Shown one piece after another: positions 473-59,161 of a stretch of 64,000 nucleotides of DNA. The notes beneath the pieces were generated by a model. That model was not told where the DNA came from, ran no database searches, and saw only the letters and a program-made list of their open reading frames with translations. How positions within the stretch are numbered: position 1 is the first letter of the stretch; the number at the start of each line of letters is the position of its first letter. The stretch lies in IMG/VR virus record IMGVR_UViG_3300024239_000011, positions 1-64,000 of that record. One strand, 5' to 3'. The translations under genes were made by a program, and so were the position numbers.

Positions 473-784
473 TTAAATCTTCGCGAAGCCCATAAGCTGA
501 ATTTGCTGGACCAGCTTGGTGATCTGAACGCGGTTTTCTGGTTTCACCGTCTCGCCATATTTCCGTAGTTCGGTGACCACCGCGATCAATTTTTCGATCA
601 CATCTATGACATGCTGTTGGGGACCGAGGGTATGACCACGGGCAGGTACCCGCATGTAATCCTCAGTCCCGGCATCACGCACGCTCTTTGGTTGGATCAC
701 TTCAGCATCGGGCACTTCCCCCCGGTAAAAGGGAATGCCTAAGTTGTTTTCATTGACACTTTCAAAGAGTTCGCGCAGCAGCAT
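473..784 (-). CDS. hypothetical protein with capsid-targeting-like leader (MLLRELFES)
   Basis: ORF; GGAG RBS; N-terminus matches the leader shared by about 20 other ORFs here. Confidence 0.7.
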   Translation of the reverse strand: MLLRELFESVNENNLGIPFYRGEVPDAEVIQPKSVRDAGTEDYMRVPARGHTLGPQQHVIDVIEKLIAVVTELRKYGETVKPENRVQITKLVQQIQLMGFAKI

Positions 785-799
785 TAATCAACTCCTAAT

Positions 800-1915
800 T
801 TAGGCATCATTCTCATTGATGAACTTGGCGAACTCATCTTCCATATCACCGTTGATGAAGTCGTACATACACTCACCAAGGCGTTGCATTTTGGAAAGAC
901 TGGACTGTCGCATCATGTTGATGAATGCTGCGGCCAAATGGGAAACTTCGTTGTCAGTCAATCGGTTGGCACGGTTTTCCTTGATCTTGTCCAGCGCAGT
1001 CATGAATTCGTCGCTGGTGTTCTCGACAAGAATACCAATGCTTTCCTTGAGACGTTCAGTGCCTTCGATGACCGAACGACCACCCATTTCTTCCGGGGTC
1101 TGGTCAAAAAGCACGAGGAATTGATCGCGAATGTCTTGTTCAATCTGGCGAGCATCACGCCCTTCACCGTCAACCGCATTCACATAATCACGAACTGTAG
1201 TAAAGTCATTGGCGTCGATGTCGCTTTTGACTAATTCACACACTGCATTGATGTTTGTGTCGTATTCACTTTCAATAGGAGCTTCTTCATCCATGACCAT
1301 CGGGTTGTCAGCCATGTTGTTGGTGATTCGCAGAGCATTACGCCCCGACTCCGGACGACCTTTATAGTCATAGGCTTTGATATCAGACACCCGACTTTTA
1401 TAGTGGTTATGCCCATAATCGGCTTGAGCAGTTTCATTGACTTTTGTACCACCAGTGCTGGTGTCAAATTGAATATCAATCATATCGTCTGGTCCACATA
1501 CCTCAAATTCTACTGCACCCGTCCCAATCTGATGTTCCAACCAACCTTCGTTGGTCTGGGTATCGGCGTCACAACCGCAACCACAACCTGCCGAGCAACC
1601 ATTTGCACACGCACAAGAGTTGCCACCGGAGCAAGAAGACCCCGCGTCTACAATTTCCACTTCACCGTCTTGGATTTCTACCTCACCATCATTATTCACG
1701 GCAATTGCTGCCTGACGCATGGTCGGTTGATCGTCCATCTTCACGCCAGCCAATTCAAGCATACGGGACAGTTCATCCCAGTTCGTGGCGCTGACGGTTG
1801 TTGTGGTAGTGTAGTTCACAGTCGGAGTAAGTCCGGTGACTTCGGATTTTTGTGCAGTCTGATCAGTACCCGTGCGAGTAATCGTCAGATTAAGGGTGGT
1901 GCTGTCGGTCATCAC
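800..1915 (-). CDS. hypothetical late protein, possibly head/core associated; internal Cys-rich segment
   Basis: 371-aa ORF overlapping the upstream gene by 4 nt; in an operon downstream of a TAAATA box. Confidence 0.65.
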   Translation of the reverse strand: MMTDSTTLNLTITRTGTDQTAQKSEVTGLTPTVNYTTTTTVSATNWDELSRMLELAGVKMDDQPTMRQAAIAVNNDGEVEIQDGEVEIVDAGSSCSGGNSCACANGCSAGCGCGCDADTQTNEGWLEHQIGTGAVEFEVCGPDDMIDIQFDTSTGGTKVNETAQADYGHNHYKSRVSDIKAYDYKGRPESGRNALRITNNMADNPMVMDEEAPIESEYDTNINAVCELVKSDIDANDFTTVRDYVNAVDGEGRDARQIEQDIRDQFLVLFDQTPEEMGGRSVIEGTERLKESIGILVENTSDEFMTALDKIKENRANRLTDNEVSHLAAAFINMMRQSSLSKMQRLGECMYDFINGDMEDEFAKFINENDA

Positions 1916-2736
1916 TTCTTTCCTTTCTTCGCACGAATGCTACCGGTTGTTGCGGATACCTCTTTACGGTTTCCTTTATCGTCTTTAAAGATACCGGTGT
2001 AAGTTTTTTGGTCGTCATCAAAATTACCAGGATCGGCAATTCCGGCGTATGCATCAAAAGCATCACCCTCAAGACGTTCCCACCAAGGCACACTCTTCGG
2101 GGCACCTTCGATGTGCGTGTTGAAATCGTTTTCATCCGCGTTTTCGGGTTTTTTGTGATCGATGAAATTGAACAATTCCGGCGTATCCGGTTTGATTTGT
2201 TCGGGTTTGCGCGTTGCAGCTACTCGTGCTAGATAGTCAAGTAGCTGGCTATTGTGTTCATTACCAACGAAGGATGCTGCATCATCATTATTTTCTGATT
2301 TGTAGTAGCCGCTGGTGTTCAGTAAGCTTGAGCGGGACAATCCAGCTTTCTTAGCTTCCGCGTCAATGTCATGTAAGGCGTTTTGACGTTCAGCCTCTAC
2401 TTCCATTGGATCATTGTCAGTGCGTACCACTATTTGGTCTTCCGGTAGTTCAAGAACAGTACGTATTTCCTGCTGAAGGATATATGCGGATACTGGCAGA
2501 CCTGTGATAACATCCAAAATCCAAACTTCAGCGGCATCAAGCTTTTGAAAATCAAGTGGGTGACGTTGCATCATGGTTTTCTTTGGACGACCGATCTCAC
2601 GAAGGTCGTGCTTCATTAATAGGCGCTCAATCCGATCCAATCTCTCGTCATTGAGTTCGACTACCGTCTTAATGCGGTAATGGTATTCTCGGTCGGCGTT
2701 CGACACGTAATGCTTAAAAGATTTAATCTCTGGCAT
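1912..2736 (-). CDS. hypothetical late (probably virion-associated) protein
   Basis: 274-aa ORF; GAGGA RBS; ATAAATA at about 2765-2771 on the minus strand. Confidence 0.7.
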   Translation of the reverse strand: MPEIKSFKHYVSNADREYHYRIKTVVELNDERLDRIERLLMKHDLREIGRPKKTMMQRHPLDFQKLDAAEVWILDVITGLPVSAYILQQEIRTVLELPEDQIVVRTDNDPMEVEAERQNALHDIDAEAKKAGLSRSSLLNTSGYYKSENNDDAASFVGNEHNSQLLDYLARVAATRKPEQIKPDTPELFNFIDHKKPENADENDFNTHIEGAPKSVPWWERLEGDAFDAYAGIADPGNFDDDQKTYTGIFKDDKGNRKEVSATTGSIRAKKGKK

Positions 2737-2771
2737 GGTTATCCTCGATGCAGCATCTATCTGTGTATTTA

Positions 2772-6526: not shown

Positions 6527-6938
6527 AGAGATTCGGTACGGACTTCTGTGCAGAGTGAAGCATGCAGGGTGGAATCGGGTCATCAATACTGAGGACAATA
6601 TCGCACGTCTGACATCGGTGATTGCTGCCTACGCCAATTGCTCCGTTGGATTGGTTGAGTTTAATTATAACCAAGTAGAAAATCAGTGCTTCGGGGGTTT
6701 GTATGGTGATGCAGGGTTTGTATTTCTTGCAATGGCACGACTGCCATTGCAAGAAATACATGAACCGGTGGATTACCCCGGTGTCGGACCACTTACCACG
6801 TCATTGGTTTCCGCAGAGAATTTACTTACAGCGGTGATATGCCATGAGATTGCTCATGTGGTTCATCCCTTTGATGACCATGGGTCGCGGTGGCAAGAAA
6901 CATACAGGGATTTAAGACAGCATTTTGTGGGTACTTAG
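6519..6938 (+). CDS. SprT-like zincin metalloprotease
   Basis: TAVICHEIAH...HGSRWQETY (HExxH plus downstream H). Confidence 0.65.
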   Translation: MIEEIRYGLLCRVKHAGWNRVINTEDNIARLTSVIAAYANCSVGLVEFNYNQVENQCFGGLYGDAGFVFLAMARLPLQEIHEPVDYPGVGPLTTSLVSAENLLTAVICHEIAHVVHPFDDHGSRWQETYRDLRQHFVGT

Positions 6939-7294
6939 TTTTTATTCCAATACCGCCACCCCTGGAACCCCTTATGAGGTATTGGCGTCGTAAGTCTATT
7001 GAATGCACCTGACCGCTCGATAAAATCACCTGACCATCGTTGACCGGTGGTCGAACATATGAAATCCCCGGAGTGCGTCCCAACAATCTCCATCCAGCCA
7101 ATGATGTGCCCGTGATAGCACAGATAGCACCGTCCACCAATTACATTACGAGTGGGCAACCGTGCCACTTTGAACCGCATTACCTGTGACCGGTCAGCGA
7201 CCGTTGCAATTTCTTTTTCGTAGTCGTCCCAGGAAATGGTAGCCGGGATCGTAATGACAATATTGGATGGTGTTTCAATTTCTGTGATTTTCAT
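6935..7294 (-). CDS. leader-bearing protein (MKITEIE), possible ASCH/PUA-like fold
   Basis: ORF ending KGFQGWRY; ATAAATA 5 nt before the ATG. Confidence 0.6.
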   Translation of the reverse strand: MKITEIETPSNIVITIPATISWDDYEKEIATVADRSQVMRFKVARLPTRNVIGGRCYLCYHGHIIGWMEIVGTHSGDFICSTTGQRWSGDFIERSGAFNRLTTPIPHKGFQGWRYWNKN

Positions 7295-7338
7295 GACAGT
7301 ATTTATTTGTGTTACACTCTAATGTTAGGAGAGTAGAT

Positions 7339-7570: not shown

Positions 7571-7578
7571 TATAAATA
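7571..7578 (+). promoter_or_regulatory. T4-late-like promoter TATAAATA
   Basis: Exact T4 late consensus, 5 nt before ATG 7584. Confidence 0.7.
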
Positions 7579-7583: not shown

Positions 7584-8408
7584 ATGCGCTACCAAGACCT
7601 TCTACTTGAAACGGTTCAAGACCAAAAAAGAACAGAAATCAAACGTCTGTTGAACATGCTTCCTGTCAAATGGAAGGATGAAGATGGTAAAGAAGTATGG
7701 CGTGTTGAACCAAGTCAAATTGATCGCGTACTTGTGGGCAAGAGTGACGATGAACTTGATGATTGGATTGTTGGTATTACAACAACACTTGAATACCTCA
7801 AGCAAAACCCCAAAGCGGTGCTACCTGATCCGTTCGGCGGTTTGACCATAAAAGCCAAAACGACATTGAAGACCATCCTACCGCGCGTGGGTAATAGCTT
7901 CATGAAGTGGCTCAAGGAAATGTATGATCCTGCCGATCTGAAAGCCGCCCAGACAGATGAAAGCACCCTGCTGGACGGACTATCCGAATACCTTCGTGAT
8001 GAACAAAACATCACAGTGCGCGAGGATGGATTGATTGAGTTTTGGGGATTGGACGGAACCAAGCGAAAGATCATCGGTGATCTACCGGTTGTCTTGTTCC
8101 ACTACACTGCCAGTAAGGCGCTTAAATCGATCAAGCACCATGGTCTGTTGCCTGACCGCCCCAGTGTGAATTATCGCAAGGCGCCGGGCGTCTATTTAAC
8201 GACTGAGGGAAGCGGGAATGCAATTGATGGCTATGCCCGTAATGCCGAACAACGGATCGGTGGGTACGCGATCAAGCTTGAGGTGAAGTGCTACCTCCAC
8301 GAGCTTCAGTCTGATCCAGATGATGCCGACATTTCCAGCGGGCGCCATCAGTTCATGGTAAATCAGGTTCCCCCAGACCGAATTATCGGGTCTGATCGTT
8401 ATTTCTAA
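7584..8408 (+). CDS. leader-bearing protein with C-terminal ADP-ribosyltransferase-like domain
   Basis: MRYQDLLLET leader; LFHYT...SIKHHGLLP...GVYLTT ART-fold strands. Confidence 0.6.
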   Translation: MRYQDLLLETVQDQKRTEIKRLLNMLPVKWKDEDGKEVWRVEPSQIDRVLVGKSDDELDDWIVGITTTLEYLKQNPKAVLPDPFGGLTIKAKTTLKTILPRVGNSFMKWLKEMYDPADLKAAQTDESTLLDGLSEYLRDEQNITVREDGLIEFWGLDGTKRKIIGDLPVVLFHYTASKALKSIKHHGLLPDRPSVNYRKAPGVYLTTEGSGNAIDGYARNAEQRIGGYAIKLEVKCYLHELQSDPDDADISSGRHQFMVNQVPPDRIIGSDRYF

Positions 8409-19361: not shown

Positions 19362-19714
19362 ATGAAGATCAATGAACTACTCGAAGATACTGCCGCCCAA
19401 ACGTCGCTAATAATTGACCAGATTATTGAGTGAGTTAAACAAGGTGTAACCAATGTTCATGTGCGCGTTATGCTATCGTTGACAGCCCCGGTTTTGTCGA
19501 TTGGGCGAAACAGAAAGGCTTTGACGGCGCCATCCATATGGACGTGTTTGATGTGGGGCAGCGATTAGCACCGGAATTGTTAGGGAAGGGTGAGGTGCGC
19601 GGTTTGAGTGACAACAATCATGTCACTTGCCGCCCGTTCTACTGGTGGCAGATCAAGTCGGTGTTCAACAAGGGGACGTGGAGCAAGGAAGGCGACATAA
19701 CAGAGTCGCGCTAA
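19362..19714 (+). pseudogene. relic of a leader-bearing ART-PolyVal-like gene
   Basis: MKINELLED... stops at 19433; another frame encodes YAIVDSPGFVDWAKQKGFDG...QIKSVFNKGTWSKEGDITESR, matching the C-terminus of 40805-41791; ATAAATA at 19322. Confidence 0.6.
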
Positions 19715-19997: not shown

Positions 19998-20537
19998 ATG
20001 CGCCTTAATGACCTATACGAATCCGCTTATAGCTATCAAACGACCTATTGGTTTAATCCCCGAACCAATGAGGTCATTTCTGCTGATAATCACGGCACCG
20101 TGGTTATGACTGATCCATCAAATTTTGAAATTGATTCCGCCATCGTTGATCAGATGTGGAATTGTTTTGATCAAGACGATGGTTCATCGAACGATGACGC
20201 AAAATTACCATCCGAACTTGTCGTCGGTTGGCCGCCTTATGGTCGGTGGAATGAGGATGATGCGTGGGAACAATTGGCGATGAATCGGGGCTGGGTTCGT
20301 GTTGGTGAAGGGGGATCGTCGTATGCATCATATTTTAGCGCCAGTACATGCGACGCAATTTGGACAGCAGTGCGCTATGTAACCAACAATGGCAATCCCG
20401 GTATTGGCGTGGAAATCGAAATCAGTCGATCATCCGGGGCAATGTATGGGAAATTAAGTCTCGATTCCCTTGATAAATTTATCAAGGGTGGCGCCCGGCG
20501 AGCAGAAGAGTTTCTGCGACGGAATCTAAGCAACTAA
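19998..20537 (+). CDS. leader-bearing hypothetical protein (MRLNDLYES)
   Basis: CTAAATA 5 nt before ATG 19998. Confidence 0.7.
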   Translation: MRLNDLYESAYSYQTTYWFNPRTNEVISADNHGTVVMTDPSNFEIDSAIVDQMWNCFDQDDGSSNDDAKLPSELVVGWPPYGRWNEDDAWEQLAMNRGWVRVGEGGSSYASYFSASTCDAIWTAVRYVTNNGNPGIGVEIEISRSSGAMYGKLSLDSLDKFIKGGARRAEEFLRRNLSN

Positions 20538-37609: not shown

Positions 37610-38401
37610 ATGCGTATTTCAGACCTGATCCCTCTTGCCGAAATGGCATTGCCATCCGAAGTCGTCAAAACGACCCGGTACTATCACGGCACAGCTTCCG
37701 AAATCTTTGCCAAGAAGATCATGAAGCAAGGCATTCAACCGCCTTCGTTCGTGATGGATAATGGGAAAAAACAAAACTCCCATTTGACCCCGGTCGAGGG
37801 GAAAGTCTACATCACGCCTTCCATCGCATACGCCCAGATATACGCTATCGGCGGAAATGTGGCGGGCAACCCCTCACTCCGGGTTCGCTACAAAGGCAAT
37901 GAATCCAAATTCGATTACTACATCAAGACCGACCCGGCGGATCGCCACTACGGGCGCTACGGTTACGTGTTTGTGATCAATGGGTCGCAGCTTGCCGATA
38001 TTCAACCAGATGAAGACAGCATCGGTGAATTTCTTGGTCAGATACTCTGTCGGGAAAGCACCATCGAGTTCATGGACCCGTTTGAGGCGAATAGAATGCG
38101 CACCGCATTGGCGGACAGCACTCTTGTCGGGATGATCAAATATCTCGCAGGAACGCATCTTGCCGATAGCACCTTGCGACGGATCAAGGACGGTGAGTAT
38201 TCCTATATGGCGAAGGCGGGCAAAGTCCTCGTCAAGCGCATGCCGGATTGGGCAAAGGTGTGCATGGTTGAATATGGCTTCCATTGTGCGCACACCGGAC
38301 CATTGATCCCCGATGAAGTATGGAAGATCGACAAAACAAAAATCGGGTGGCTTGTGCGTGACGGTAGCAATTTCTTCGAGATAGCTAAACGGGTTCGTTG
38401 A
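37610..38401 (+). CDS. leader-bearing ADP-ribosyltransferase-like protein
   Basis: MRISDLIPLAEM; YYHGTA...KIMKQGIQP...GKVYITPSIAYAQIYA; GTAAATA 5 nt before the ATG. Confidence 0.65.
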   Translation: MRISDLIPLAEMALPSEVVKTTRYYHGTASEIFAKKIMKQGIQPPSFVMDNGKKQNSHLTPVEGKVYITPSIAYAQIYAIGGNVAGNPSLRVRYKGNESKFDYYIKTDPADRHYGRYGYVFVINGSQLADIQPDEDSIGEFLGQILCRESTIEFMDPFEANRMRTALADSTLVGMIKYLAGTHLADSTLRRIKDGEYSYMAKAGKVLVKRMPDWAKVCMVEYGFHCAHTGPLIPDEVWKIDKTKIGWLVRDGSNFFEIAKRVR

Positions 38402-39140: not shown

Positions 39141-39557
39141 CTACCGTGGATATATCTGTTTCGCGTTGAACAGATACATGACTTCCCTGGTATCCTCGGT
39201 ATCAATTTCAAGTTCGTAGTCCGTGAACTCCTGGGCAAGACGCATCGCCATCCGATGGTAGAGCTTGACCCGTGAAGGCTGGTTCCTCTTTGCCGAGAAC
39301 GCAAACATCTTCGGATGACGTTCGTTGATCGCTTCCCGCATGATGTTGATGACCGTGGAGAACACTGCGAAGGCATTCCCGGTGCCGGTGATGCCCTGAC
39401 CATGCTTGGTCGTGAAGCTCACGCTGAGCGAATATGCCCCGGCAATGTCCACCTGATATTCAAGTCCGTCGATCTCGAACACCGCCGACCACAAACCGGG
39501 TTGCTTGGAGGTCCATTCCCAATTCACGATGTCGGAAAACAGTTCTAGCAAGATCAT
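39141..39557 (-). CDS. leader-bearing protein (MILLELFSD), possible GNAT-like fold
   Basis: FAFSAKRNQPSRVKLYHRM. Confidence 0.6.
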   Translation of the reverse strand: MILLELFSDIVNWEWTSKQPGLWSAVFEIDGLEYQVDIAGAYSLSVSFTTKHGQGITGTGNAFAVFSTVINIMREAINERHPKMFAFSAKRNQPSRVKLYHRMAMRLAQEFTDYELEIDTEDTREVMYLFNAKQIYPR

Positions 39558-39563: not shown

Positions 39564-40184
39564 TCACCGTTCGATAAGGTCATCCGCTTTGCCCGCCAGG
39601 GTGACAAAGGGTCGAAGCCGATAGCTTTTGTAGACGTTGCTCCACACCGCCCCGCTTTTGGCCGGATAATAGTCATATTTGTCGGGATTGAAAATGAACA
39701 CGTCAAACCGTGGGTCTTTGACCAATTGCTTCCAAATATACACACCACCGCGTGTTTGAAGATCATCGGGCAATAGGTAATCACAGGCATTATCGAGCAA
39801 CCACTTATAGAGTTGTACCGAGAGGTTCTTCCCGCGAGCTTGTTCGCTGATGTAGACTGCTATGACCCGTTTACCGACACCCTTGAGGTCCGGGTTTGTC
39901 ACCGGGTAGCCATCCCCGAAAGGGGCGGTCGGAGCAATCAGCGCGATGTAAGCGATGGGGGTTCCATCGTTGAAGATATAGTAGATGGATTCCTTTTTGT
40001 CAGCGTTCAGCAATACGTAATATTCGCCAATGCGCCCAACGATTTCCATGTCTGGGGGTAGTGTTGGTTCGGTGGGTACCGGGAACAAGGTCAATTGTTT
40101 TGGCGTGAAGTCTTGATCTTGCGTCAAGTCCTTCAGGTGAGAACCATCAACTCCACCGCCAATGTCGATTTCATCTATCCGCAT
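39564..40184 (-). CDS. leader-bearing GNAT acetyltransferase
   Basis: MRIDEI; VIAVYISEQARGKNLSVQLYKWL...QTRGGVYIWKQL. Confidence 0.7.
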   Translation of the reverse strand: MRIDEIDIGGGVDGSHLKDLTQDQDFTPKQLTLFPVPTEPTLPPDMEIVGRIGEYYVLLNADKKESIYYIFNDGTPIAYIALIAPTAPFGDGYPVTNPDLKGVGKRVIAVYISEQARGKNLSVQLYKWLLDNACDYLLPDDLQTRGGVYIWKQLVKDPRFDVFIFNPDKYDYYPAKSGAVWSNVYKSYRLRPFVTLAGKADDLIER

Positions 40185-40808
40185 TTACAGTTTCCACCCT
40201 TCAAGTCCGCCCCCAAGCGGTTTGTCCAGATTGCCGCCGATAGCTGCCCGGTGGAACACCAGATCATCGTAGTCTTCCTGATCCGTCGAGGTGTTGGGCT
40301 TGAGCGGTTTGTTCGAACGCGGATGATCCACCTCGAATTCATGCGCCGGGTGTGGTGGGGCGTCGTGATCGATGTCGCCAATTGCGTATTCTTCCGCTTC
40401 GTTGCTGTCGGTATGGGTCGGTCCATAATTCATCCGTGATATGAAAGCGTTGTAGACCTGTTCCGCTTTGTGGATGTTGAAATAGCGAATGTCACGCACC
40501 GGGACGATCCGATAATTCTGACGCAATTTGGTATAGTTCAGTCCGATGCGGAATGGTTTCTGACCGGCGACTGCATAGGTCTTCAGAAGATCAAGGGACC
40601 GATCACGAGTGAGGCTGACGCCGGAAACTTCCTTGCCATCGACCAACTGATAACGCCCTTCTTCGTCCCGCTTCAACGTCCCATGAACGACATGGGTGGA
40701 TGCGCCACATTTGATACGGTTGGTCTTGAGCATGCGGCGCAAATGATCCCCTGAGGTGAAGTGGTAGATCAGTTGATCCGGGGCATTGATGATCTCGTCT
40801 ATTCTCAT
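40185..40808 (-). CDS. leader-bearing ART-like protein
   Basis: MRIDEIINA; LIYHFTS...MLKTNRI...GVSLTRD...NEAEEY. Confidence 0.55.
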   Translation of the reverse strand: MRIDEIINAPDQLIYHFTSGDHLRRMLKTNRIKCGASTHVVHGTLKRDEEGRYQLVDGKEVSGVSLTRDRSLDLLKTYAVAGQKPFRIGLNYTKLRQNYRIVPVRDIRYFNIHKAEQVYNAFISRMNYGPTHTDSNEAEEYAIGDIDHDAPPHPAHEFEVDHPRSNKPLKPNTSTDQEDYDDLVFHRAAIGGNLDKPLGGGLEGWKL

Positions 40809-41791
40809 TTCGTCCCCTCGCTGATCCGTGGGTCTTCGCGGTTGTACGTACCGGTGTTGCTCAATGCTGATTTGACTTGGTGGGGATCGAAAACCGCCAA
40901 CGTCAACGGCGCCCCTGGATGTTCACGGGTCCAGAACCCATCGAATTTGTTCCGGCGCATCCATGCCCGCACCGCAGGTTTTTCAAGGATACCGAAGTCA
41001 CCGCCCTTGAGATATCCCACTGCGGTTTTTGGTCCGTACAAGGCGCCAGGAAAAATCGCCTGGAAGTTCTTCTCAAGGAATGCTGCAAGCCTGTCTAGAT
41101 GCTCTTGGTTCTGGTAGTCGAACGGGTTCTCCATCCGCACGTAGCACGGCAGGACATGCCCGCCGCGTGCGAAGTAGGATGCCGTATCCGGGGAGGTCGC
41201 AAAGAAAATCGCGTTACCGCCGGTTCCCCGATTGCCTGGGAGCTTGAACTGATCAAAGGCGGGCTTGGAAGTCCCGTGGTACATCACCGCCGGGTTGCCG
41301 TCTTCATCCACGACTTTGCTGTTTCCGAACCATGCCCAGAACGCCGAATCTGGTTCAGGGAGGCGGGCTTCGAGGATGCTCTCAAACTTGCGTTTGTGGC
41401 GGTAGCTCCAAAATGCGGCGCCATCCGCTTCGAGGTTGCTGGACGAATCAATGGTGTAGCCGATGCGCTCAAGGTGGTCGTACAGCGCCGTTGCGATCCC
41501 ACGACGACGGAAGCTCGGCTTGGTTTCAATGCGGTGGAATTCGCCACTGTCATTTTCATCCGGATAGAACTTACCTTTGGCAACCTCTACCGCGTCGATG
41601 AAGGCACGGACGACCACCATAGTGGCGTCTTCATCTTCATCCGAGGGCTGACGTTGTGCAGTAACGTTCAGCACCGTTCCATCTGCCAATTTGTATTCAG
41701 CAGAGTTACGCGCAAAGCCCCCAACTACATCACCAAGTCTGGTATAGTGGCGATCTTGAAAACGCGCTCCGGTAATCTCAATAATTCTCAT
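40805..41791 (-). CDS. leader-bearing GNAT + ART-PolyVal-like fusion
   Basis: FRRRGIATALYD...GAAFW (GNAT); FWAWFGNSKVVDEDGNPAVMYHGT...AIFFATSPDTASYFA...CYVRMENPF...FDG...AVFDPHQVKS (ART). Confidence 0.75.
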   Translation of the reverse strand: MRIIEITGARFQDRHYTRLGDVVGGFARNSAEYKLADGTVLNVTAQRQPSDEDEDATMVVVRAFIDAVEVAKGKFYPDENDSGEFHRIETKPSFRRRGIATALYDHLERIGYTIDSSSNLEADGAAFWSYRHKRKFESILEARLPEPDSAFWAWFGNSKVVDEDGNPAVMYHGTSKPAFDQFKLPGNRGTGGNAIFFATSPDTASYFARGGHVLPCYVRMENPFDYQNQEHLDRLAAFLEKNFQAIFPGALYGPKTAVGYLKGGDFGILEKPAVRAWMRRNKFDGFWTREHPGAPLTLAVFDPHQVKSALSNTGTYNREDPRISEGTK

Positions 41792-44301: not shown

Positions 44302-44396
44302 GGCGTCTCTCCCTGAACAATACGAGGATCATAACAGCCCTGGGTGGTGATGTCAATCATCGGCCAAAATAAATACGAATAGAATAGGAAACGCCG

Positions 44397-44945
44397 ATGC
44401 GAATTTTAGAAATAACCGAACATGTTGCGCGTGTGGTCGATACGGAGCCTCATAAAGGCATATGGTTCCGCCACGAAAGTCCTCATTGGATTACTCGGCT
44501 TCGACCGCTAACCTATGAAGAACTTAAAGTAGCGCGTCCTGAATATGATGTACCCGAACGTGTGAAAACTGAAAAACAATATCACGCAATGCTCCCTACA
44601 CATCCGGAAAATACCAGCTTCTTATATGCGACGGTGACGGGTTGTCACAAGATGCCAGACCCGCTCGATTACCTTGGTTTTACCTATTACTTCAAACTCA
44701 CCCCTGATCAAGTCGAACAGTCAATCTTTGACGTGGTTGATCGGAAGACATGGATGCAGCCAACTGTTGGGGCAGCCGGTTTCCGACAAGCCAAGGAAAT
44801 TTGGGACGCTCATTCGAACGAATTCAAATCCTATGACGACCCTGAAATTGGGCAAATTGATCCACGTATTGAAGTAATCATGCCATTTTCGGTCAGCCCA
44901 CTACTTTACATCCCACAAATTGAAGATAGACAATCTCCTAAATAG
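44397..44945 (+). CDS. leader-bearing hypothetical protein (MRILEITE)
   Basis: ATAAATA upstream; WFRHES motif. Confidence 0.7.
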   Translation: MRILEITEHVARVVDTEPHKGIWFRHESPHWITRLRPLTYEELKVARPEYDVPERVKTEKQYHAMLPTHPENTSFLYATVTGCHKMPDPLDYLGFTYYFKLTPDQVEQSIFDVVDRKTWMQPTVGAAGFRQAKEIWDAHSNEFKSYDDPEIGQIDPRIEVIMPFSVSPLLYIPQIEDRQSPK

Positions 44946-48307: not shown

Positions 48308-49690
48308 TCAGTAGTAATCTGGATCGGGTTGTGGTAGTTTAATTTTCAAACCGAAATACGCGCAAACATTGAAACCTTTACTGCGTTCAATTACGTTATT
48401 CCGAACCGCATCCCGGATGTTCGCAGCAAGTATTTTCCCGGTAATACCCTTCTGCTTCATCATCACCAATAGTCGGCGTTTGATCGCCGGGATGATGGCT
48501 TGGTCAAGGTTCCCGGCAACAAAGTTTACAATGCGCCACGCCACGTTTTCCGGGCTGTTAATGTCGATGTCCTCTCCGTCCAGATCGGTGTACTCTGGGT
48601 TACCGCCTGCAATGTGATAGAACGCTCGACGGGCATTTGGGAACTTGCGAAGTGCCGCATCTACCTCGTTATCCGGTTCACCGGTTTCCCGGCGGGCGGC
48701 AATGATCATACGAGCGATTTTCTCGTGGTATTCACGGGTATAGGCGTTCTCGTCACTTGCAATCAGCATAACTCGGACGAAGCGGAGAATCGCGTTACGG
48801 AGGTCGCCAGGGCGTTGATGGTAGTTGTTTCCACCGAGGATACGGAACTCAACGTACCCACTTTTCTCCATGCGGAAAAACGCCACGGTGAACGATTTCT
48901 CGCTGCCACCACCACCGCCATAATTGTCCTTGAACTGAATACGACCCATATTGTTCATTTCGCGCCCAAGCATAGTGCTCAGATAGTCCATGACTTTCTT
49001 GAGGTCTTTCGAACGGGAAATATCCTGTTTGGGGGTGCGTTCCCATGGGTGAAGGTAATCGTCACGTAGACGCTTGATTAGCGGGTCGATACGGCTGGCG
49101 ATGTTGTTTTTTCCGACCGACAGTACCCGTTCGAAATTAGATTTCAGGTGATCCTCACCGAGAAAAACCATGACTTTGAGCGGGTCGAGTTTGCTCATAC
49201 GAGCTTTGTCGTTGAAAGATATACCAACATGGAACCCCGTGGTTCCGTTGGTCTGGTAATCGTGTTCGGTGTAGTAGGAGAACAGTTCATTCATTGCCTC
49301 GAAGAACTGCGTTGGCTCCATTGGCGGTGAAACGATTTCAAGCGGCATGATACCGTTCTGCTCTTTCGTCTCTTTACCGTCTACGGTGACGATTTCGCCA
49401 ATAGAAACATCTCGGTCAATATACCAATGGCTACCGGAGAAATCCTTCGGTTTTTGGTCAAACACGAGTTTCATGGGACTATCACCCCACCCTTTCTCGC
49501 GTGCAAATTTGAATACCGACGACCGTTGTTCAAGATCGGCTGCCATCTGCTCGATAGTGCGGCGTTCTTGTATGGGATTACCACGGATGAAGAACTCGGA
49601 TTCAAAACCAAGCATCACTTCACCGAGATTCGACCCTGCCAAATCCCGTTGTCCCATGCGCACTGCTTCATTTAGTTCTTTGATTTTCAT
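48308..49690 (-). CDS. leader-bearing putative amidoligase (COOH-NH2 ligase fold)
   Basis: MKIKELNEA; GFESEF, DRDVSI, LEIVSPP, TNGTTGFHVGIS, VEFRILGG; CTAAATA 5 nt before the ATG. Confidence 0.75.
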   Translation of the reverse strand: MKIKELNEAVRMGQRDLAGSNLGEVMLGFESEFFIRGNPIQERRTIEQMAADLEQRSSVFKFAREKGWGDSPMKLVFDQKPKDFSGSHWYIDRDVSIGEIVTVDGKETKEQNGIMPLEIVSPPMEPTQFFEAMNELFSYYTEHDYQTNGTTGFHVGISFNDKARMSKLDPLKVMVFLGEDHLKSNFERVLSVGKNNIASRIDPLIKRLRDDYLHPWERTPKQDISRSKDLKKVMDYLSTMLGREMNNMGRIQFKDNYGGGGGSEKSFTVAFFRMEKSGYVEFRILGGNNYHQRPGDLRNAILRFVRVMLIASDENAYTREYHEKIARMIIAARRETGEPDNEVDAALRKFPNARRAFYHIAGGNPEYTDLDGEDIDINSPENVAWRIVNFVAGNLDQAIIPAIKRRLLVMMKQKGITGKILAANIRDAVRNNVIERSKGFNVCAYFGLKIKLPQPDPDYY

Positions 49691-50304: not shown

Positions 50305-50366
50305 TTGTTCCTCTTGATAATGCGGAAATCTTAAAACGCGAAATAGTGATTTTCAATAAATATCAG

Positions 50367-50760
50367 ATGCGTATAAAAGAATTACTCAACGAATACAAGG
50401 TCGAACATACTCCAAACGGGTATATCGTATTTCGCAACCCAAGTGCAACCGAGTTGGCGAATCTTGTCAACCGTATGGGGTCACTACGCGGAATTTACCA
50501 TAGTGGTACCAACTATGTATGGGGAGCAATGGAAGGTGTTCATTGCCACTTATTTTGGGAACTCGGGTTGGACGAACACGACCCGGAATGCCTTATATAT
50601 TTTGTTACGAACGATAAAAACGATAGCGTAGATTGGACGACGCGACTTAGTGTCGCCCCGGCAGGTTTTTAACTACTGTGTGTCACCCTCCCGTCTTGCT
50701 AAAAAATTTCCAAAGTTTCAGCGTATGCTTGGTATAACTGATGCCAAGGTAACAGCCTGA
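50367..50760 (+). pseudogene. leader-bearing gene (MRIKELLNEY) with a 1-nt frameshift in a T run at about 50670
   Basis: Frame stops at 50672; removing one T gives ...GF-NYCVSPSRLAKKFPKFQRMLGITDAKVTA ending at 50760. Confidence 0.5.
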
Positions 50761-53827: not shown

Positions 53828-53958
53828 TTGTACTCCAATGTTCGATATAGTAACAATGTATTTATATAAGGCGAAACGCCAACATCTAAATAATGGTAGA
53901 AGAATTTAGCTGTGATAAGCAGCACATGATATAGTACCCGTAAGGGAAGGAGGTACAA

Positions 53959-54801: not shown

Positions 54802-54816
54802 ACATAAGGGTTTGGT

Positions 54817-56517: not shown

Positions 56518-56551
56518 CACCCCTTGGCTAAATATAGCCACGGAGGTGTTA
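56515..56551 (+). promoter_or_regulatory. late promoter in the loop of an RBS-occluding hairpin
   Basis: taacacc-cc-t-tggcta[aata]tagcca-c-gg-a-ggtgtta; GGAGG lies in the 3' arm. Confidence 0.65.
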
Positions 56552-56552: not shown

Positions 56553-57101
56553 GTGAAAATACGTGAAATTCTCAGAGAAAGTACGTTTTCCCCCAATGAA
56601 GTTTACCTTCACGGGGGTCCGAAGGCACTCACTACGGGGCATTTCAAACGCTATGGGCGTGATGGGATGGATAGCGGAGCCTTGTTTTTCATCAAGGAAA
56701 GCCCGACCGGATGGCGATATGCGGTCGGTTATGCGATGACCAAACCAGATGGTGGTGTATATCGGTGTCGCATCAAGCTCACACCCGATCAAGTTTTTGA
56801 TTTCGCCAATCCGCAGCACCGTTGTCTTGCCCGTACCAATTTGTCTCCCGAGGAATTTAAATCGTGGAACGACGCTTCGCGGAACGGGCATCTCGATTGG
56901 ACTTCCATAGATGATGAATTGATGGGAGAATGGGGGTTTAAAGGGGCGGTACTGTTTGAACGCCCGGCTGGAATAAACGGCTATGATGAAGACGCCGTGT
57001 CGGTCGGGGTGTTTGACCCGGCGGATGTTGAAATCTTGGGGTTTACCCCGAAGGAAGAAGTTCTACAGAAATACCCATTTCCGGTACCGGGACAAAACTG
57101 A
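56553..57101 (+). CDS. leader-bearing ART-PolyVal-like protein
   Basis: MKIREILRES; YLHGG...GALFF...AVGYA...WGFKGAV...VGVFDP. Confidence 0.6.
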   Translation: MKIREILRESTFSPNEVYLHGGPKALTTGHFKRYGRDGMDSGALFFIKESPTGWRYAVGYAMTKPDGGVYRCRIKLTPDQVFDFANPQHRCLARTNLSPEEFKSWNDASRNGHLDWTSIDDELMGEWGFKGAVLFERPAGINGYDEDAVSVGVFDPADVEILGFTPKEEVLQKYPFPVPGQN

Positions 57102-58090
57102 TGCGTATTCAAGAAATTCTCACTGAAGCATCCAGCCAAGGTGTTCCTGTAATTTCCAAGCAGGAAGCGGCAGATCGTAAACTGTTTGGACCTGTCTATC
57201 ACGGGTCGTCTAGTATCGACACGATTCTGAAGACCGGTTTCGACCCCAACCGATCCCGCCCCACCGGGGTTTCCCGCCAAGGTTTCCGCCTTCAGGCAGT
57301 CGGAAACGGCATCGCCAACGGGTATCCGTTTGACCAATACGCGCCGGGGATGGGCATTCCCGCACCAATCCATCACCTGGGTTTCGCGGTTTACTTCACC
57401 ACGAGCAAGACCATCGCCAAGATGTATAACGGAGACTCGTTGAAGGGTATCCGTGAATTCTACTTGGATGTTCCTAACCGAACCGACATCAATTTCGCTG
57501 CCCCCAACACCATGATGCGATGGTGGCGTCAGCATGGCTACAACCCGGACCCTGATATCCTCAAGAACCATGACGTGGCTAGTTGGATACAGGCGACCGA
57601 CGAACTCACCAAGACCCTTTCGAGCCAATACGATGCGGTATGGTTCAAGGGTAAGAGCATCCGGGGACGCGCCCTCGACGGCGACCAGATCGCGGTGTAT
57701 GACGCCTCACGAATCTATGTCATCGACCCGAAGCTTTCGAGCGGTTTGGACATTGGCGCCAAGGTGCGCCACAACCAGAAAATCCTTCATTACGCGGACT
57801 ACCCCACAGTTGAACTCGATGATGTGATTGCGGATGCGCGTTTCACGGGCTGGCGTGCGATGTACCGCCGGGATGCGGCGGGTTCGGACAGCCCATTCGC
57901 CGGGCGCTCCATTCCGTTGCTGTACATTCCACCACCGACCATGGTCGGGGTCATTGTCAAAAAGAGTGAACTTGCACCACATACCCGCGATCATCATGGT
58001 GGGCGGTCCTGCCTCGTATCAGTTAAATGGCAGAAAGGCGGGACATAGGACAACTATTACGAAGATGAACTCGAACCGGTGGTCAAATGA
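57101..58090 (+). CDS. leader-bearing ART-like protein with C-terminal KOW/SH3-like domain; in-frame TAG at 58046-58048
   Basis: MRIQEILTEA; PVYHGS...LKTGFD...FAVYFTT...YDAVWF...QIAVYD; frame continues past TAG as DNYYEDELEPVVK to a TGA overlapping the next ATG. Confidence 0.65.
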
Positions 58091-58563
58091 AGATACAGGA
58101 AATACTTCAGGAAGGTGTACTCAAGGACGAACCCCATATTGTTCGCACCTTTGATATTCATGACATCGGTAATCGTCGCTTCATGTTTCATCCCAATAAA
58201 CATCAGATGATCCTTGGGGATGCTCGTGGTGCTGGGAAAGGGCGCGTTGTACGAGGCAGCCATGCCGAGGAATATTACGAACTGTTCGGTACCAACAACG
58301 GGTTCGATGACTGCGCTCGTGGCTGGGTTGGTTGTGGAGGATCATATAATAATGGAATCATCCATTTTGCCCCAATGATCCCCGACCCCACCCCGGAGGC
58401 ATGGCAATATTACGAGGCAGGATGGAAATGTCTGGAATATTTTGTCAAGAACGGCGGCGCCACCCCGAAGACAGTCGTGCGTGGATTTGGTCGAACCAAC
58501 TTCGAGCAGACCATCGCTGATATTTTCAAGCCGGTCAGAGATACGTCTTCAGCCAAGCAATAA
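58087..58563 (+). CDS. leader-bearing hypothetical protein (MKIQEILQEG)
   Basis: ORF; HAEE and ARGWVG motifs. Confidence 0.65.
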   Translation: MKIQEILQEGVLKDEPHIVRTFDIHDIGNRRFMFHPNKHQMILGDARGAGKGRVVRGSHAEEYYELFGTNNGFDDCARGWVGCGGSYNNGIIHFAPMIPDPTPEAWQYYEAGWKCLEYFVKNGGATPKTVVRGFGRTNFEQTIADIFKPVRDTSSAKQ

Positions 58564-59161
58564 ACTCTTCCGGGGTTTTTTCTTCGTCATCACCATCCTC
58601 AATGATGGTGGTAAATTTACCCTTAATGACAAAATCGATCAAGGTCTTGGCAGATTCTCGATTTGCCGCTGACGACTGGATAACGTAAAGTGTTTGACCT
58701 TTTGGCTCTAGATTGAAAATTGCATGTATTTGGCGTGCTGCTCGACTTGGGACTAGCTCACCAGTTTCAGTAATACGCATATCTTCTGCCGTGAGTGGAC
58801 GAAAATCACCCGGAACATCATCAGGGTCGTAGTTTTCGGGCACGAATACGAATTCTACCCCAGACTGCCGCACATAGAAACATGGACAATCCCGGAACGT
58901 ACTCTTGTAGTACGTTACATAGGGATCATTACGCAGACGCAAATCACCGGGTTTCTTACCCCAGTTATAGTCAGGGAACGTTTGAGCGAGATTTACCACA
59001 CCAACCGCTTTGACGAGCTTGGTGTATGAAATTTCAACGGCATTGTCCATCATGGCTTCGAGAAACGGTGCCATATGTTCATTTGTGCAATTGCCTATGT
59101 ATTGGAAGCCCTGTCCTTGGTCGGTACTCTCAATGAGATCAAGAATTTCTCGAATATCCAT
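58535..59161 (-). CDS. leader-bearing hypothetical protein (MDIREILDLIES)
   Basis: TATAAATA at 59183-59190; internal MRITE repeat of the leader. Confidence 0.65.
   Translation of the reverse strand: MDIREILDLIESTDQGQGFQYIGNCTNEHMAPFLEAMMDNAVEISYTKLVKAVGVVNLAQTFPDYNWGKKPGDLRLRNDPYVTYYKSTFRDCPCFYVRQSGVEFVFVPENYDPDDVPGDFRPLTAEDMRITETGELVPSRAARQIHAIFNLEPKGQTLYVIQSSAANRESAKTLIDFVIKGKFTTIIEDGDDEEKTPEEFIAWLKTYL

What the first reader, a model, noticed from the sequence alone, without database searches (positions are those of the whole stretch)
473..59161. About 21 unrelated proteins share a capsid-targeting-like N-terminal leader: candidate packaged effector arsenal
Seen: starts at 784 MLLRELFE, 7294 MKITEIE, 7584 MRYQDLLLE, 19362 MKINELLE, 19998 MRLNDLYE, 22072 MRLHQIINE, 26064 MRLDEI, 32371 MKIREIINE, 35571 MKIREI, 37610 MRISDLIPLAE, 39557 MILLELF, 40184 and 40808 MRIDEI, 41791 MRIIEI, 44397 MRILEITE, 49690 MKIKELNE, 50367 MRIKELLNE, 56553 MKIREILRE, 57101 MRIQEILTE, 58087 MKIQEILQE and 59161 MDIREIL. 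Nearly all sit behind a TAAATA box or in an operon headed by one; genes behind TTGACA promoters lack the leader. Known: T4 internal proteins and Alt carry a ~10-aa capsid-targeting sequence that the gp21 protease removes after (I/L)-x-E. Inference: this is a portable packaging tag grafted onto diverse enzymes (ARTs, GNATs, amidoligase, ParB-like), which are loaded into the head and injected to modify host or defence targets at infection onset.
Basis: partly seen in the sequence, partly recalled or inferred. Interest (0 to 1): 0.9.

Follow-up and report, generated by a model that had tools for sequence, protein, structure and literature searches.

The report
Shared virion-packaging leader on phage proteins
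About twenty otherwise unrelated late proteins of this 543-kb uncultivated giant phage start with the same 8-9-residue tag ending in glutamate, which looks like phage T4's capsid-targeting propeptide, and proteins carrying it in two related cultured phages are found in purified virions.

Summary
Twenty genes of 101-514 aa, plus one doubtful 23-aa ORF, start with M-[KR]-[IL]-x-[ED]-[IL]-(h)-(x)-E. Conservation stops sharply at residue 9-10, synonymous codons vary freely, and the proteins show no significant BLASTP similarity to one another.

- **Promoters:** 14 of 20 leader genes sit within 35 nt of a TAAATA box, against 11 of 74 other genes. None sits behind a sigma70-like promoter.
- **Source:** the window is the first 64 kb of a 543-kb IMG/VR contig. 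Its nearest cultured relatives are T4-core jumbo phages (RsoM2USA, Atu_ph07), which have Portal_T4, a Peptidase_S77 prohead protease and a Gp23 capsid protein.
- **Relatives carry their own versions:** RsoM2USA has MKTFKQFLxE, Atu_ph07 has M[KR]WxQL[TN]E, and Lu11 and Dickeya JA29 have a Glu-less MKIQLAVA / MxIxVSLSA.
- **Junction:** in 99 orthologs of one cargo protein the leader ends in hydrophobic-x-Glu|Ala in 70%.
- **Virion data:** published proteomes detect leader proteins, including orthologs of window genes 30827-32371 and 48308-49690. In Atu_ph07, 9 of 9 leader genes were detected against 52 of 197 others, but those nine are one paralog family.

Best reading: a T4-CTS-like packaging propeptide. 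Cleavage, head location and injection are untested.

The parts
473..784 (-). Leader gene, 103 aa, MLLRELFE (degenerate). Third gene of an operon headed by the TAAATA box at 2766-2771.
   Evidence: PSSM rank 17. The near-identical leader MFLRELFE occurs on an ortholog of another cargo family.
6935..7294 (-). Leader gene, 119 aa, MKITEIE. TAAATA at 7300-7305, 5 nt before the ATG (leaderless type).
   Evidence: Coding score is weak.
7584..8408 (+). Leader gene, 274 aa, MRYQDLLLE. TAAATA at 7573-7578, 5 nt before the ATG.
   Evidence: Sub-threshold Tox-ART-HYD1 hit, E = 0.005.
19362..19433 (+). Doubtful: a 23-aa ORF, MKINELLED..., 33 nt after the TAAATA box at 19323-19328. Probably a remnant of a leader gene.
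   Evidence: No continuation in any frame.
19998..20537 (+). Leader gene, 179 aa, MRLNDLYE. TAAATA at 19987-19992, 5 nt before the ATG.
22072..22815 (+). Leader gene, 247 aa, MRLHQIINE. TAAATA at 22039-22044, one half of a divergent box pair.
   Evidence: Phage_clamp_A hit is below threshold.
25429..26064 (-). Leader gene, 211 aa, MRLDEI. TAAATA at 26070-26075, 5 nt before the ATG.
30827..32371 (-). Leader gene, 514 aa, MKIREIINE|T. It carries a conserved N-terminal domain of about 260 aa with no known fold relative. TAAATA at 32393-32398.
   Evidence: Orthologs are virion proteins: RsoM2USA ORF132 and Atu_ph07 gp394. The junction was analysed in 99 orthologs. AF2 pLDDT is 89. Foldseek found no match.
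34723..35571 (-). Leader gene, 282 aa, MKIREI. TAAATA at 35594-35599.
37610..38401 (+). Leader gene, 263 aa, MRISDLIPLAE, followed by a YYHGT motif. TAAATA at 37599-37604, 5 nt before the ATG.
   Evidence: It has a better coding score than the overlapping minus-strand ORF (59 against 31).
39141..39557 (-). Leader gene, 138 aa, MILLELF (weakest leader). Last gene of the 41791 operon.
   Evidence: rank 23. Homologous to the C-terminal part of the Atu_ph07 virion protein gp53, E = 4e-7.
39564..40184 (-). Leader gene, 206 aa, MRIDEI. Internal to its operon, with its own Shine-Dalgarno sequence.
40185..40808 (-). Leader gene, 207 aa, MRIDEIIN, followed by an IYHFT motif. Internal to its operon.
40805..41791 (-). 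Leader gene, 328 aa, MRIIEI. GNAT + ART-PolyVal. Heads the four-gene operon behind the TAAATA box at 41815-41820.
   Evidence: Pfam ART-PolyVal E = 2.5e-19 (70.9 bits, cut-off 31.2) and Acetyltransf_1 28.6 bits (cut-off 20.7).
44397..44945 (+). Leader gene, 182 aa, MRILEITE. TAAATA at 44370-44375.
48308..49690 (-). Leader gene, 460 aa, MKIKELNE|AVRMGQ. Amidoligase_2. TAAATA at 49696-49701, 5 nt before the ATG.
   Evidence: Pfam 31.7 bits, cut-off 22. The Atu_ph07 homolog gp196 is virion-detected and lies near the portal gene. A close relative, P0122, keeps the junction with a different leader.
50367..50672 (+). Leader gene, 101 aa, MRIKELLNE. TAAATA at 50357-50362, 4 nt before the ATG.
56553..57101 (+). 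Leader gene, 182 aa, (GTG)KIREILRE. Heads a three-gene operon behind the TAAATA box at 56529-56534.
57101..58048 (+). Leader gene, 315 aa, MRIQEILTE. Internal to its operon.
   Evidence: Sub-threshold ART-PolyVal hit, E = 6e-4.
58087..58563 (+). Leader gene, 158 aa, MKIQEILQE. Internal to its operon.
58535..59161 (-). Leader gene, 208 aa, MDIREILDLIE. TAAATA at 59183-59188.
   Evidence: PSSM rank 7.
2766..2771 (-). TAAATA late-type promoter box heading the operon 2736...473. Only the last gene of this operon carries the leader.

Best explanation
The 8-9-residue N-terminal leader (M-[KR]-[IL]-x-[ED]-[IL]-h-(x)-E) is a capsid/virion-targeting propeptide of the kind known from phage T4, where it is called the capsid targeting sequence (CTS).

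**Proposed mechanism.**
1. The leader genes are transcribed late from T4-late-type TAAATA promoters. Seven of them are apparently made as leaderless mRNAs.
2. The leader docks the new protein onto the scaffolding core of the assembling prohead.
3. A gp21-type (Peptidase_S77) prohead protease then removes the leader after the Glu of the hydrophobic-x-Glu motif.
4. The mature cargo stays in the head. Cargo includes a GNAT-ART enzyme, an amidoligase-like protein, a widely conserved domain of unknown fold, and many proteins of unknown function.
5. By analogy with T4 Alt and the T4 internal proteins, the cargo is probably delivered into the next host with the DNA.

**What is shown and what is inferred.**
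- Shown: the tag is real, acts at the peptide level, is modular and is specific to each lineage. It goes with late-type promoters. Tag-bearing proteins are in purified virions of two related phages.
- Inferred: head location rather than another virion part, the docking partner, cleavage after Glu, and ejection with an effector role.
For: **1. The signal is a peptide signal.** Arg is encoded by CGG, CGT, CGC, AGA and CGA. Lys is encoded by AAA and AAG. Ile is encoded by ATA, ATT and ATC. Conservation ends sharply at residue 9-10.

**2. It is modular.** With the leader removed, the 20 proteins show no BLASTP similarity below E = 0.006.

**3. Each genome has its own version, carried on several proteins.**
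- Lu11: MKIQLAVA on 9-11 adjacent genes and nowhere else in 280 kb.
- RsoM2USA: MKTFKQFLxE and related forms.
- Atu_ph07: M[KR]WxQL[TN]E.
- Dickeya JA29: MxIxVS[LI]SA.
- Orthologs of window 30827-32371 carry whichever leader is typical of their own genome.

**4. The junction looks like a cleavage site.** In 99 alignable orthologs the leader length has its mode at 8-9 residues and ranges up to 24. P1 is Glu in 69, P1' is Ala in 82, and P3 is L, I, F or V in 70. This matches the T4 gp21 L/I-x-E rule and its Glu-Ala bond. The amidoligase family keeps E|AVRMGQ or E|LKM while the leader itself changes.

**5. The protease context fits.**
- RsoM2USA has Portal_T4, Peptidase_S77 and Gp23.
- Atu_ph07 has gp20, gp21, gp22 and gp23 homologs and a gp55-like factor.
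- Head-module proteins of Atu_ph07 also begin with early [LI]-x-E motifs and sit behind TAAATA boxes.
- The window's tail-tube protein groups with these T4-core jumbo phages.

**6. Published virion proteomes detect leader proteins.**
- RsoM2USA ORF132 (the ortholog) and ORF89 (same leader) are among the 10 most abundant virion bands.
- Atu_ph07 gp394 (the ortholog; 18 peptides, 41% coverage), gp196 (amidoligase homolog; 14 peptides), gp407, gp408 and gp53-63 are all detected.
- In the first 175 kb of Atu_ph07, 9 of 9 genes matching the leader pattern are detected, against 52 of 197 others (p = 1e-5).

**7. The promoters are late-type.** TAAATA matches the T4 late box TATAAATA at -13 to -6 and Lu11's annotated middle/late promoter. 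It is enriched at leader genes.

**8. The model structure is compatible.** In the AF2 model the leader is a short, lower-confidence helix joined to the domain by a coil.
Against: - No experimental data exist for this phage itself. Its prohead protease, scaffold and capsid genes lie outside the window and could not be retrieved.
- The mass-spectrometry data show virion association only. They do not show head location, N-terminal processing or ejection.
- The 9-of-9 result in Atu_ph07 comes from one paralogous family, gp53-63. The number of independent families with virion evidence is about four in Atu_ph07 and two in RsoM2USA.
- The Lu11 and JA29 leader class has no Glu, so a Glu-specific cut cannot be general.
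- Several window leaders lack a second Glu at position 8-9 (35571, 40184, 40808, 41791). If these are cut, it would have to be after Glu5 or further downstream.
- Within a single orthologous family, the leader plus junction could simply be a conserved N-terminal helix.
- Most of the cargo has no recognisable effector function.
Confidence: 0.68

Rival explanations
1. The leader is an assembly or docking peptide for another part of the virion (tail, baseplate, whiskers, neck), or a recognition tag for an assembly chaperone or translocase such as a BCS1/Clp-type AAA+ protein. It would not be a head-core targeting and cleavage signal.
For: Mass spectrometry shows only 'virion-associated'. The Atu_ph07 authors suggest that the gp31-76 cluster may hold unique structural proteins. 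Jumbo phages of this group encode Clp/BCS1-type ATPases, which have been proposed to move proteins into heads.
Against: Canonical tail and baseplate-like proteins in the window lack the leader: tail tube 54250 and 54817, and the MGISF family. Head-module proteins of Atu_ph07 have similar N-termini. The conserved hydrophobic-x-Glu|Ala junction fits a prohead-protease site. The enzymes carried (ART, GNAT, amidoligase) are unlikely structural parts.
Confidence: 0.13
2. The shared N-terminus reflects common descent. The proteins would be very diverged paralogs, for example of one ART-like superfamily, that kept an N-terminal helix. There would be no functional targeting signal.
For: Several leader proteins carry a YHGT / YHxT motif just after the leader (window 37610 and 40808; Lu11_0200, 0202, 0205, 0206; Atu_ph07 gp407). 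Three window proteins have ART-type hits, only one of them significant. Atu_ph07 gp53-63 are true paralogs.
Against: There is no detectable similarity beyond residue 10 among the window proteins. The leader is found on clearly different folds: Amidoligase_2, GNAT-ART, and the 260-aa domain of unknown fold. Orthologs in different genomes swap leader type to match their own genome. That points to selection on the tag, not to inheritance with the domain.
Confidence: 0.07
3. The conserved start is an mRNA or translation-initiation signal. It could be a downstream element needed for leaderless late transcripts. Its peptide product would have no role.
For: All seven genes with TAAATA 4-5 nt before the ATG, and no Shine-Dalgarno sequence, carry the leader. 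ATA codons are over-used at position 3, at 6 of 15 against 12% genome-wide.
Against: Synonymous sites vary freely. Thirteen leader genes have ordinary Shine-Dalgarno-containing 5' regions or lie inside operons. Relatives use quite different leader sequences with the same physicochemical pattern.
Confidence: 0.04
4. The leader is a regulatory tag, for example an N-degron or a recognition site for timed proteolysis or activation of toxic enzymes. It would keep the cargo inactive in the producing cell and would have nothing to do with targeting.
For: Potentially toxic enzymes (ART, GNAT) carry it. A Glu-directed cut would release a new N-terminus.
Against: This does not explain why leader proteins are found in virions, nor why the tag changes from genome to genome. 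It is not exclusive of the main explanation, since T4 propeptides do both.
Confidence: 0.05

Closest known systems
Phage T4 capsid targeting sequence (CTS) of internal proteins IPI, IPII, IPIII and of Alt, removed by the gp21 prohead protease
   Same: Both are short N-terminal propeptides on otherwise unrelated, fast-evolving proteins. The T4 ones are 10-19 residues long. Both end in hydrophobic-x-Glu, are expressed late, and sit in phages with a T4-type portal, S77 protease, scaffold and Gp23 head (shown here for the relatives). Both sets of cargo include an ADP-ribosyltransferase, Alt in T4.
   Different: The leader sequence and length differ (8-9 residues). There are far more cargo genes here, at least 20 in 64 kb of a 543-kb genome, against a handful in T4. 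The cargo genes are scattered in many small late operons on both strands. Seven appear to be leaderless transcripts. Cleavage, targeting and ejection are untested here. I did not compare the leader letter by letter with the T4 CTS.
Propeptides of head and ejection proteins in phiKZ-like giant phages (phiKZ, 201phi2-1, SPN3US), cut by their prohead protease at S/A/G-x-E
   Same: Both involve many head-internal proteins in giant phages, processed after Glu by a gp21-related protease (papers listed; the motif itself is from my own knowledge).
   Different: Those propeptides are long and differ from one protein to the next. They are not one shared short leader, and those phages belong to a different clade.
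Polyvalent proteins (Iyer et al. 2017): giant multidomain proteins injected with phage or plasmid DNA, which contain the ART-PolyVal domain
   Same: Window gene 40805-41791 has the ART-PolyVal domain fused to a GNAT domain. It matches very long PHROG profiles of 1664-3427 aa. The proposed role is the same: enzymes delivered together with the DNA.
   Different: Here the enzymes are separate small genes, each with its own leader, rather than domains of one polyprotein.
Encapsulin cargo-loading peptides
   Same: Both are short terminal peptides that load diverse enzymes into an HK97-fold shell. This is a functional analogy only, drawn from my own knowledge.
   Different: Encapsulin peptides are usually C-terminal, are not cleaved, and belong to cellular compartments rather than virions.

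Membership tests
T4-type capsid targeting sequence (CTS) system | One short N-terminal peptide shared by otherwise unrelated proteins | tested here: met
   Twenty genes share it. Information content is confined to residues 2-9. No BLASTP similarity remains beyond the leader.
T4-type capsid targeting sequence (CTS) system | The peptide ends in the prohead-protease motif (L/I)-x-E | tested here: met
   [LIFMV]-x-E occurs in residues 3-13 of 20 of 20 leader genes and 9 of 74 others. In 99 orthologs, P1 is Glu in 69 and P1' is Ala in 82. Actual cleavage was not tested.
T4-type capsid targeting sequence (CTS) system | The phage encodes a gp21-type (Peptidase_S77) prohead protease and a scaffolding core | tested here: inconclusive
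   Present in the relatives RsoM2USA (Pfam S77 E = 5e-24) and Atu_ph07 (gp204). The window has no head module. Two scans failed to fetch that part of the 543-kb contig.
T4-type capsid targeting sequence (CTS) system | Tagged proteins are present in mature particles | tested here: met
   Met only through relatives' published proteomes: RsoM2USA ORF132 and ORF89, and Atu_ph07 gp394, gp196, gp407, gp408 and gp53-63. Not testable for this uncultivated phage.
T4-type capsid targeting sequence (CTS) system | The tag is necessary and sufficient to encapsidate a foreign protein, and is removed during maturation | not testable with these tools
   This needs fusion-protein and N-terminomics experiments.
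T4-type capsid targeting sequence (CTS) system | Late expression from gp55-type TATAAATA promoters | tested here: met
   Met at sequence level only. The TAAATA box is enriched at leader genes (p = 4e-6). It is spaced as the T4 box is at -13 to -6. The same box precedes the portal and protease genes of Atu_ph07.
T4-type capsid targeting sequence (CTS) system | Sequence homology of the leader to the T4 CTS | not tested
   The peptide is too short for a homology test, and I did not write out the T4 letters. Only its architecture was compared.
ART-PolyVal ADP-ribosyltransferase (PF18760) | Profile match above the Pfam gathering score | tested here: met
   40805-41791: 70.9 bits against a cut-off of 31.2. 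57101-58048 (20.9 bits) and Lu11_0205 (22.9 bits) are below the cut-off.
Amidoligase_2 (PF12224) | Profile match above the Pfam gathering score | tested here: met
   48308-49690: 31.7 bits against a cut-off of 22.
   No such hit in Pfam, PHROGs or NCBIfam.

The most novel reading that the evidence does not exclude
The tag may be a general 'postcode' for virion cargo in huge phages. On this reading:
- It exists in at least two classes that track the head-maturation machinery. A Glu-ended class occurs in T4-core jumbo phages. A Ser/Ala-ended class (MKIQLAVA|A, MxIxVSLS|A) occurs in the Lu11, PaBG and Dickeya 'Lupandier' group, whose capsid protein is not of the Gp23 type.
- In this phage it is fused to a minimal late promoter, giving a roughly 40-bp plug-in cassette of TAAATA, 5 nt, a leaderless ATG and the leader. 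Such a cassette could turn any captured gene into a late-expressed, packaged protein.

If so, a leader profile would allow the packaged, and possibly injected, proteome of uncultivated giant phages to be read directly from sequence.
Probability: 0.3. Interest if true: 0.78.

Novelty: new variant of a known kind. Interest (0 to 1): 0.62.

Why it matters
Giant phages carry hundreds of genes of unknown function, and it is rarely clear which products travel in the particle. If this short tag marks virion cargo, it has several uses.

- **Prediction:** it gives a sequence-only way to pick out packaged, and possibly injected, proteins in uncultivated 300-600-kb phages. These are candidate host-takeover or anti-defence enzymes such as the GNAT-ART fusion.
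- **Scope of the T4 principle:** it would show that the T4 capsid-targeting principle has expanded to dozens of cargo proteins. A second, Glu-less class in a different head lineage hints at co-evolution between the tag and the maturation machinery.
- **Engineering:** it offers ready-made tags for loading foreign proteins into large phage capsids.

The literature searches I ran found the CTS concept only for T4, for P1 and for phiKZ/SPN3US-type phages. They did not find it for the Atu_ph07, RsoM2USA or Lu11 groups.

Tried and rejected
- **Nucleotide-level signal:** rejected, because synonymous sites vary freely and the leader also occurs inside operons.
- **Chance, or a general N-terminal bias:** rejected by the six-frame scan, the leave-one-out PSSM and the information profile.
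- **Close paralogy of the window proteins:** rejected by all-against-all BLASTP. Remote ART-type relatedness among some of them remains possible.
- **An upstream promoter element besides TAAATA:** none is visible in the aligned upstream regions.
- **Function of the unknown leader proteins:** Pfam, PHROGs and NCBIfam gave nothing for most of them.
- **Fold of the conserved 260-aa domain:** the AF2 model is confident (pLDDT 89), but Foldseek against the PDB gave only insignificant GNAT-like hits, with best E = 0.1 and TM of 0.25 or less.
- **Head module of the source contig:** two IMG/VR scans did not return this contig among the best 80. One used the RsoM2USA capsid protein and one used an eight-sequence capsid alignment.
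- **T4-type head genes in Lu11:** Pfam on ten structural-region proteins found none, and Lu11 was not among the top Gp23 hits. This agrees with the PaBG paper's non-Gp23 capsid protein for that group.
- **Wide homolog search for the amidoligase:** it returned only one relative.
- **tRNA near 19850:** ARAGORN found none, while Rfam finds a partial tRNA.

Full report
**1. What the window is**

The 64-kb window is about 49% G+C and has no close DNA match among 50,697 phage records. It is the first 64 kb of IMGVR_UViG_3300024239_000011, a 543,035-bp viral contig. The same protein also occurs on an 869,618-bp contig.

A simple codon-usage gene call gives about 96 genes, arranged in many short operons on both strands. 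Recognisable genes include:
- an RtcB-PhoH fusion and an RNA ligase;
- tail-tube-like proteins and giant-virion or baseplate-like proteins;
- a TnpB-type transposase.

The tail-tube protein is closest to those of Sinorhizobium phage Phosso, PA5oct, Rak2-like phages and Atu_ph07. These phages carry a T4-type Gp23 capsid protein.

**2.

- A strict pattern (start codon, [RK], [ILV], x, [ED], [ILV]) occurs 17 times in all six frames. Fifteen hits head ORFs of 101-514 aa, and none lies inside a long ORF.
- Information by residue class is 2.2, 1.6, 2.6 and 1.6 bits at positions 2, 3, 5 and 6. It falls below 0.15 bits from position 10 on, and is about zero in the other 74 genes.
- A hydrophobic-x-Glu triplet lies within residues 3-13 in 20 of 20 leader genes, against 9 of 74 others.

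The ORF at 19362 is only 23 aa and has no continuation, so it is probably a remnant. The plus-strand gene 37610-38401 scores better than an overlapping minus-strand ORF.

**3. Peptide signal, not nucleotide signal; module, not paralogy**

- Codon 2 uses five Arg and two Lys codons, and codon 3 uses all three Ile codons.
- Six leader genes lie inside operons behind ordinary ribosome-binding sites.
- With the first 12 residues removed, the best BLASTP E-value between any two leader proteins is 0.006.

Known domains among the leader proteins:

| Gene | Domain | Status |
|---|---|---|
| 40805-41791 | GNAT + ART-PolyVal | above Pfam cut-off |
| 48308-49690 | Amidoligase_2 | above Pfam cut-off |
| 57101-58048 | ART-PolyVal | below cut-off |
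| 7584-8408 | Tox-ART-HYD1 | below cut-off |

No ParB-like hit was found, and most leader proteins are unannotatable.

**4. Promoters**

TAAATA occurs 44 times in the window, and 27 copies lie 4-31 nt upstream of a gene start on the same strand.

- Fourteen of 20 leader genes have a box within 35 nt, against 11 of 74 others (p = 4e-6). The remaining six leader genes are inside operons headed by a box.
- Sigma70-like promoters precede 0 of 20 leader genes and 16 of 74 others.
- No second upstream element is visible.

The box matches the T4 late promoter TATAAATA, which lies at -13 to -6. It also matches Lu11's annotated middle/late promoter, aACTGTAAATAg, and it precedes the portal and protease genes of Atu_ph07.

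In seven genes the box ends 4-5 nt before the ATG and there is no Shine-Dalgarno sequence. On T4 spacing the transcript would start at the A of the ATG, giving a leaderless mRNA. All seven of these genes carry the leader. This is an inference from spacing only.

**5. Relatives have the same device with their own sequence**

| Phage | Leader | Where found |
|---|---|---|
| Lu11 | M[KR]IQLA[VT]A | starts of Lu11_0198 to 0213; the strict DNA pattern hits nine times in 280 kb, only there |
| Dickeya JA29 | MxIxVS[LI]SA | JA29_178 to 183 |
| RsoM2USA | MKTFKQFL(S/N)E; also MKLHEISE, MRLLQELLE, MKLIQKLSE | ORF81, ORF89, ORF132 and others |
| Atu_ph07 | M[KR]WxQL[TN]E; also MQYTDLIE, MKLINLLE, MRWQDISSKKLTE | gp53-63, gp408 and others |

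Orthologs of window 30827-32371 align from the residue after the leader onward. Each carries the leader type of its own genome.

**6. The junction looks like a cleavage site**

I aligned 99 of 120 database orthologs of that protein at the conserved mature start, A-L-x-P-S-x-Y-R.

- Leader length has its mode at 8-9 residues and ranges up to 24.
- P1 is Glu in 69, Ser in 16 and Ala in 11.
- P1' is Ala in 82.
- P3 is L, I, F or V in 70.

This matches the T4 gp21 rule, which is cleavage after L/I-x-E, classically at a Glu-Ala bond.

A 51%-identical relative of the amidoligase keeps E|AVRMGQ(K/R)DLAG, while four of the eight leader residues differ. The RsoM2USA and Atu_ph07 homologs keep E|LKM.

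The Ser/Ala-ended leaders include those of Lu11 and JA29, which the PaBG paper places in the 'Lupandier' group. According to that paper, the group has an HK97-like capsid protein outside the Gp23 family, and its virion proteins are processed. This hints that the junction co-varies with the maturation machinery. It rests on only a few lineages.

**7. Protease context**

- RsoM2USA encodes Portal_T4, Peptidase_S77 and Gp23 in T4 order. Its scaffold-like ORF382 has 26 hydrophobic-x-Glu sites.
- Atu_ph07 has gp20, gp21, gp22 and gp23 homologs and a gp55-like factor.

The head module of the window's own contig could not be fetched, so this step rests on relatedness.

**8. Experimental evidence from the literature**

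In RsoM2USA, ORF132 (the ortholog) and ORF89 (same leader) are two of the ten most abundant virion bands identified by LC-MS/MS (PMC8504454).

In Atu_ph07 I mapped Table S5 of PMC6102473 onto the genome.
- For gp196 to gp215, computed masses match the table to 0.01 kDa.
- For gp394, gp407 and gp408, the mapping rests on matching lengths and gene spacing.

| Atu_ph07 protein | Relation to the window | MS evidence |
|---|---|---|
| gp394 | ortholog of 30827-32371 | 18 peptides, 41% coverage |
| gp196 | amidoligase homolog, near the portal gene | 14 peptides, 30% coverage |
| gp407, gp408, gp53-63 | carry the Atu_ph07 leader | detected |

References.

Over the first 175 kb, 61 of 68 detected proteins could be placed. 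All 9 genes matching a generic leader pattern were detected, against 52 of 197 others (p = 1e-5).

Caveat: gp53-63 are paralogs. The independent families with virion evidence therefore number about four in Atu_ph07 and two in RsoM2USA.

Window 39141-39557 is homologous to part of gp53.

**9. Structure**

An AF2 model of the first 270 residues of 30827-32371, built with a 90-sequence alignment, is confident (pLDDT 89, pTM 0.83). The leader forms a short helix at residues 3-7 with lower confidence, followed by a coil. Foldseek finds no significant PDB relative.

**10. Interpretation**

The best-supported reading is a T4-CTS-like propeptide:
1. late expression;
2. docking to the prohead core;
3. 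removal by an S77-type protease after the Glu;
4. retention of the cargo in the head.

The T4 literature already describes internal proteins as diverse defence proteins that share only a conserved CTS (PMC3012670). It also records that ten residues suffice for targeting (PMC9026906). So the principle is known.

What appears new:
- the clade, which is T4-core jumbo and huge phages;
- the scale, with at least 20 cargo genes in 12% of one genome;
- the genome-specific leader variants;
- a second, Glu-less class in a different head lineage;
- the compact promoter, leaderless-start and leader arrangement.

My literature searches found no description of any of this for these phages.

Head location, cleavage and injection remain inferences. 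Calling the set an 'effector arsenal' goes beyond the data, since most of the cargo has no assignable function.

Noticed in passing
window 13218-14441 (+), 43348-43503 (-), 44971-46914 (+), 46981-47739 (+): A second shared N-terminus of about 22 residues, MGISFxGxxIPxGTFKIKxNIP, heads four genes that sit behind TAAATA boxes. Two of them match PHROGs of giant virion, baseplate-wedge or structural proteins. The 51-aa copy at 43348-43503 looks truncated.
   Followed up: partly
window 53904-54194 (+), with 53015-53827 (-) and 54250-56517 (+): Rfam finds a complete group I intron (82 bits, E = 2e-19). It lies between an ORF whose start resembles a GIY-YIG homing endonuclease (my reading, not tested against any profile) and the gene 54250-54801 (not tested), which is followed by the tail-tube-like gene 54817-56517. 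I did not work out which gene it interrupts.
   Followed up: no
window 19838-19899 (-): Rfam finds a partial tRNA covering model positions 6-65 of 71 (49 bits). ARAGORN does not call it, so it may be a tRNA fragment. It lies next to the 23-aa leader remnant at 19362.
   Followed up: partly
window 7300-7305, 7573-7578, 19987-19992, 26070-26075, 37599-37604, 49696-49701, 50357-50362: Seven TAAATA boxes end 4-5 nt before an ATG, with no Shine-Dalgarno sequence. On T4 late-promoter spacing these would give leaderless mRNAs. All seven genes carry the leader peptide.
   Followed up: partly
window 22039-22058: Two TAAATA boxes on opposite strands lie within a near-palindrome (TAAATAGTTTCAACTATTTA). 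They appear to drive the divergent genes 22072 (+) and 22026 (-).
   Followed up: no
window 61214-62389 (+): A transposase matching PHROG 506 (E = 6e-128) lies inside the phage genome. In RsoM2USA a 'putative transposase' (ORF38) was reported among the abundant virion bands.
   Followed up: no
window 14481-16880 (-) and 29759-30796 (+): An 799-aa protein matches both PhoH-like and RtcB RNA-ligase PHROGs, and a separate RNA ligase gene is present. Together they suggest an RNA-repair toolkit.
   Followed up: no
L001/L007 (Lu11 156.3-169.4 kb) and L097 (Dickeya JA29_178 to 183): A Glu-less leader class (MKIQLAVA|A, MxIxVS[LI]S|A) sits on runs of adjacent genes in Lupandier-group phages. It may point to a prohead protease with a different specificity.
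   Followed up: partly
L096 (Atu_ph07 162443-163612, gp200): The gene annotated 'topoisomerase IV subunit A' lies between the portal and prohead-protease genes. It starts MTKKIEKIINHIINE and was detected in virions. The annotation may be wrong, and it may be a head-core protein.
   Followed up: no
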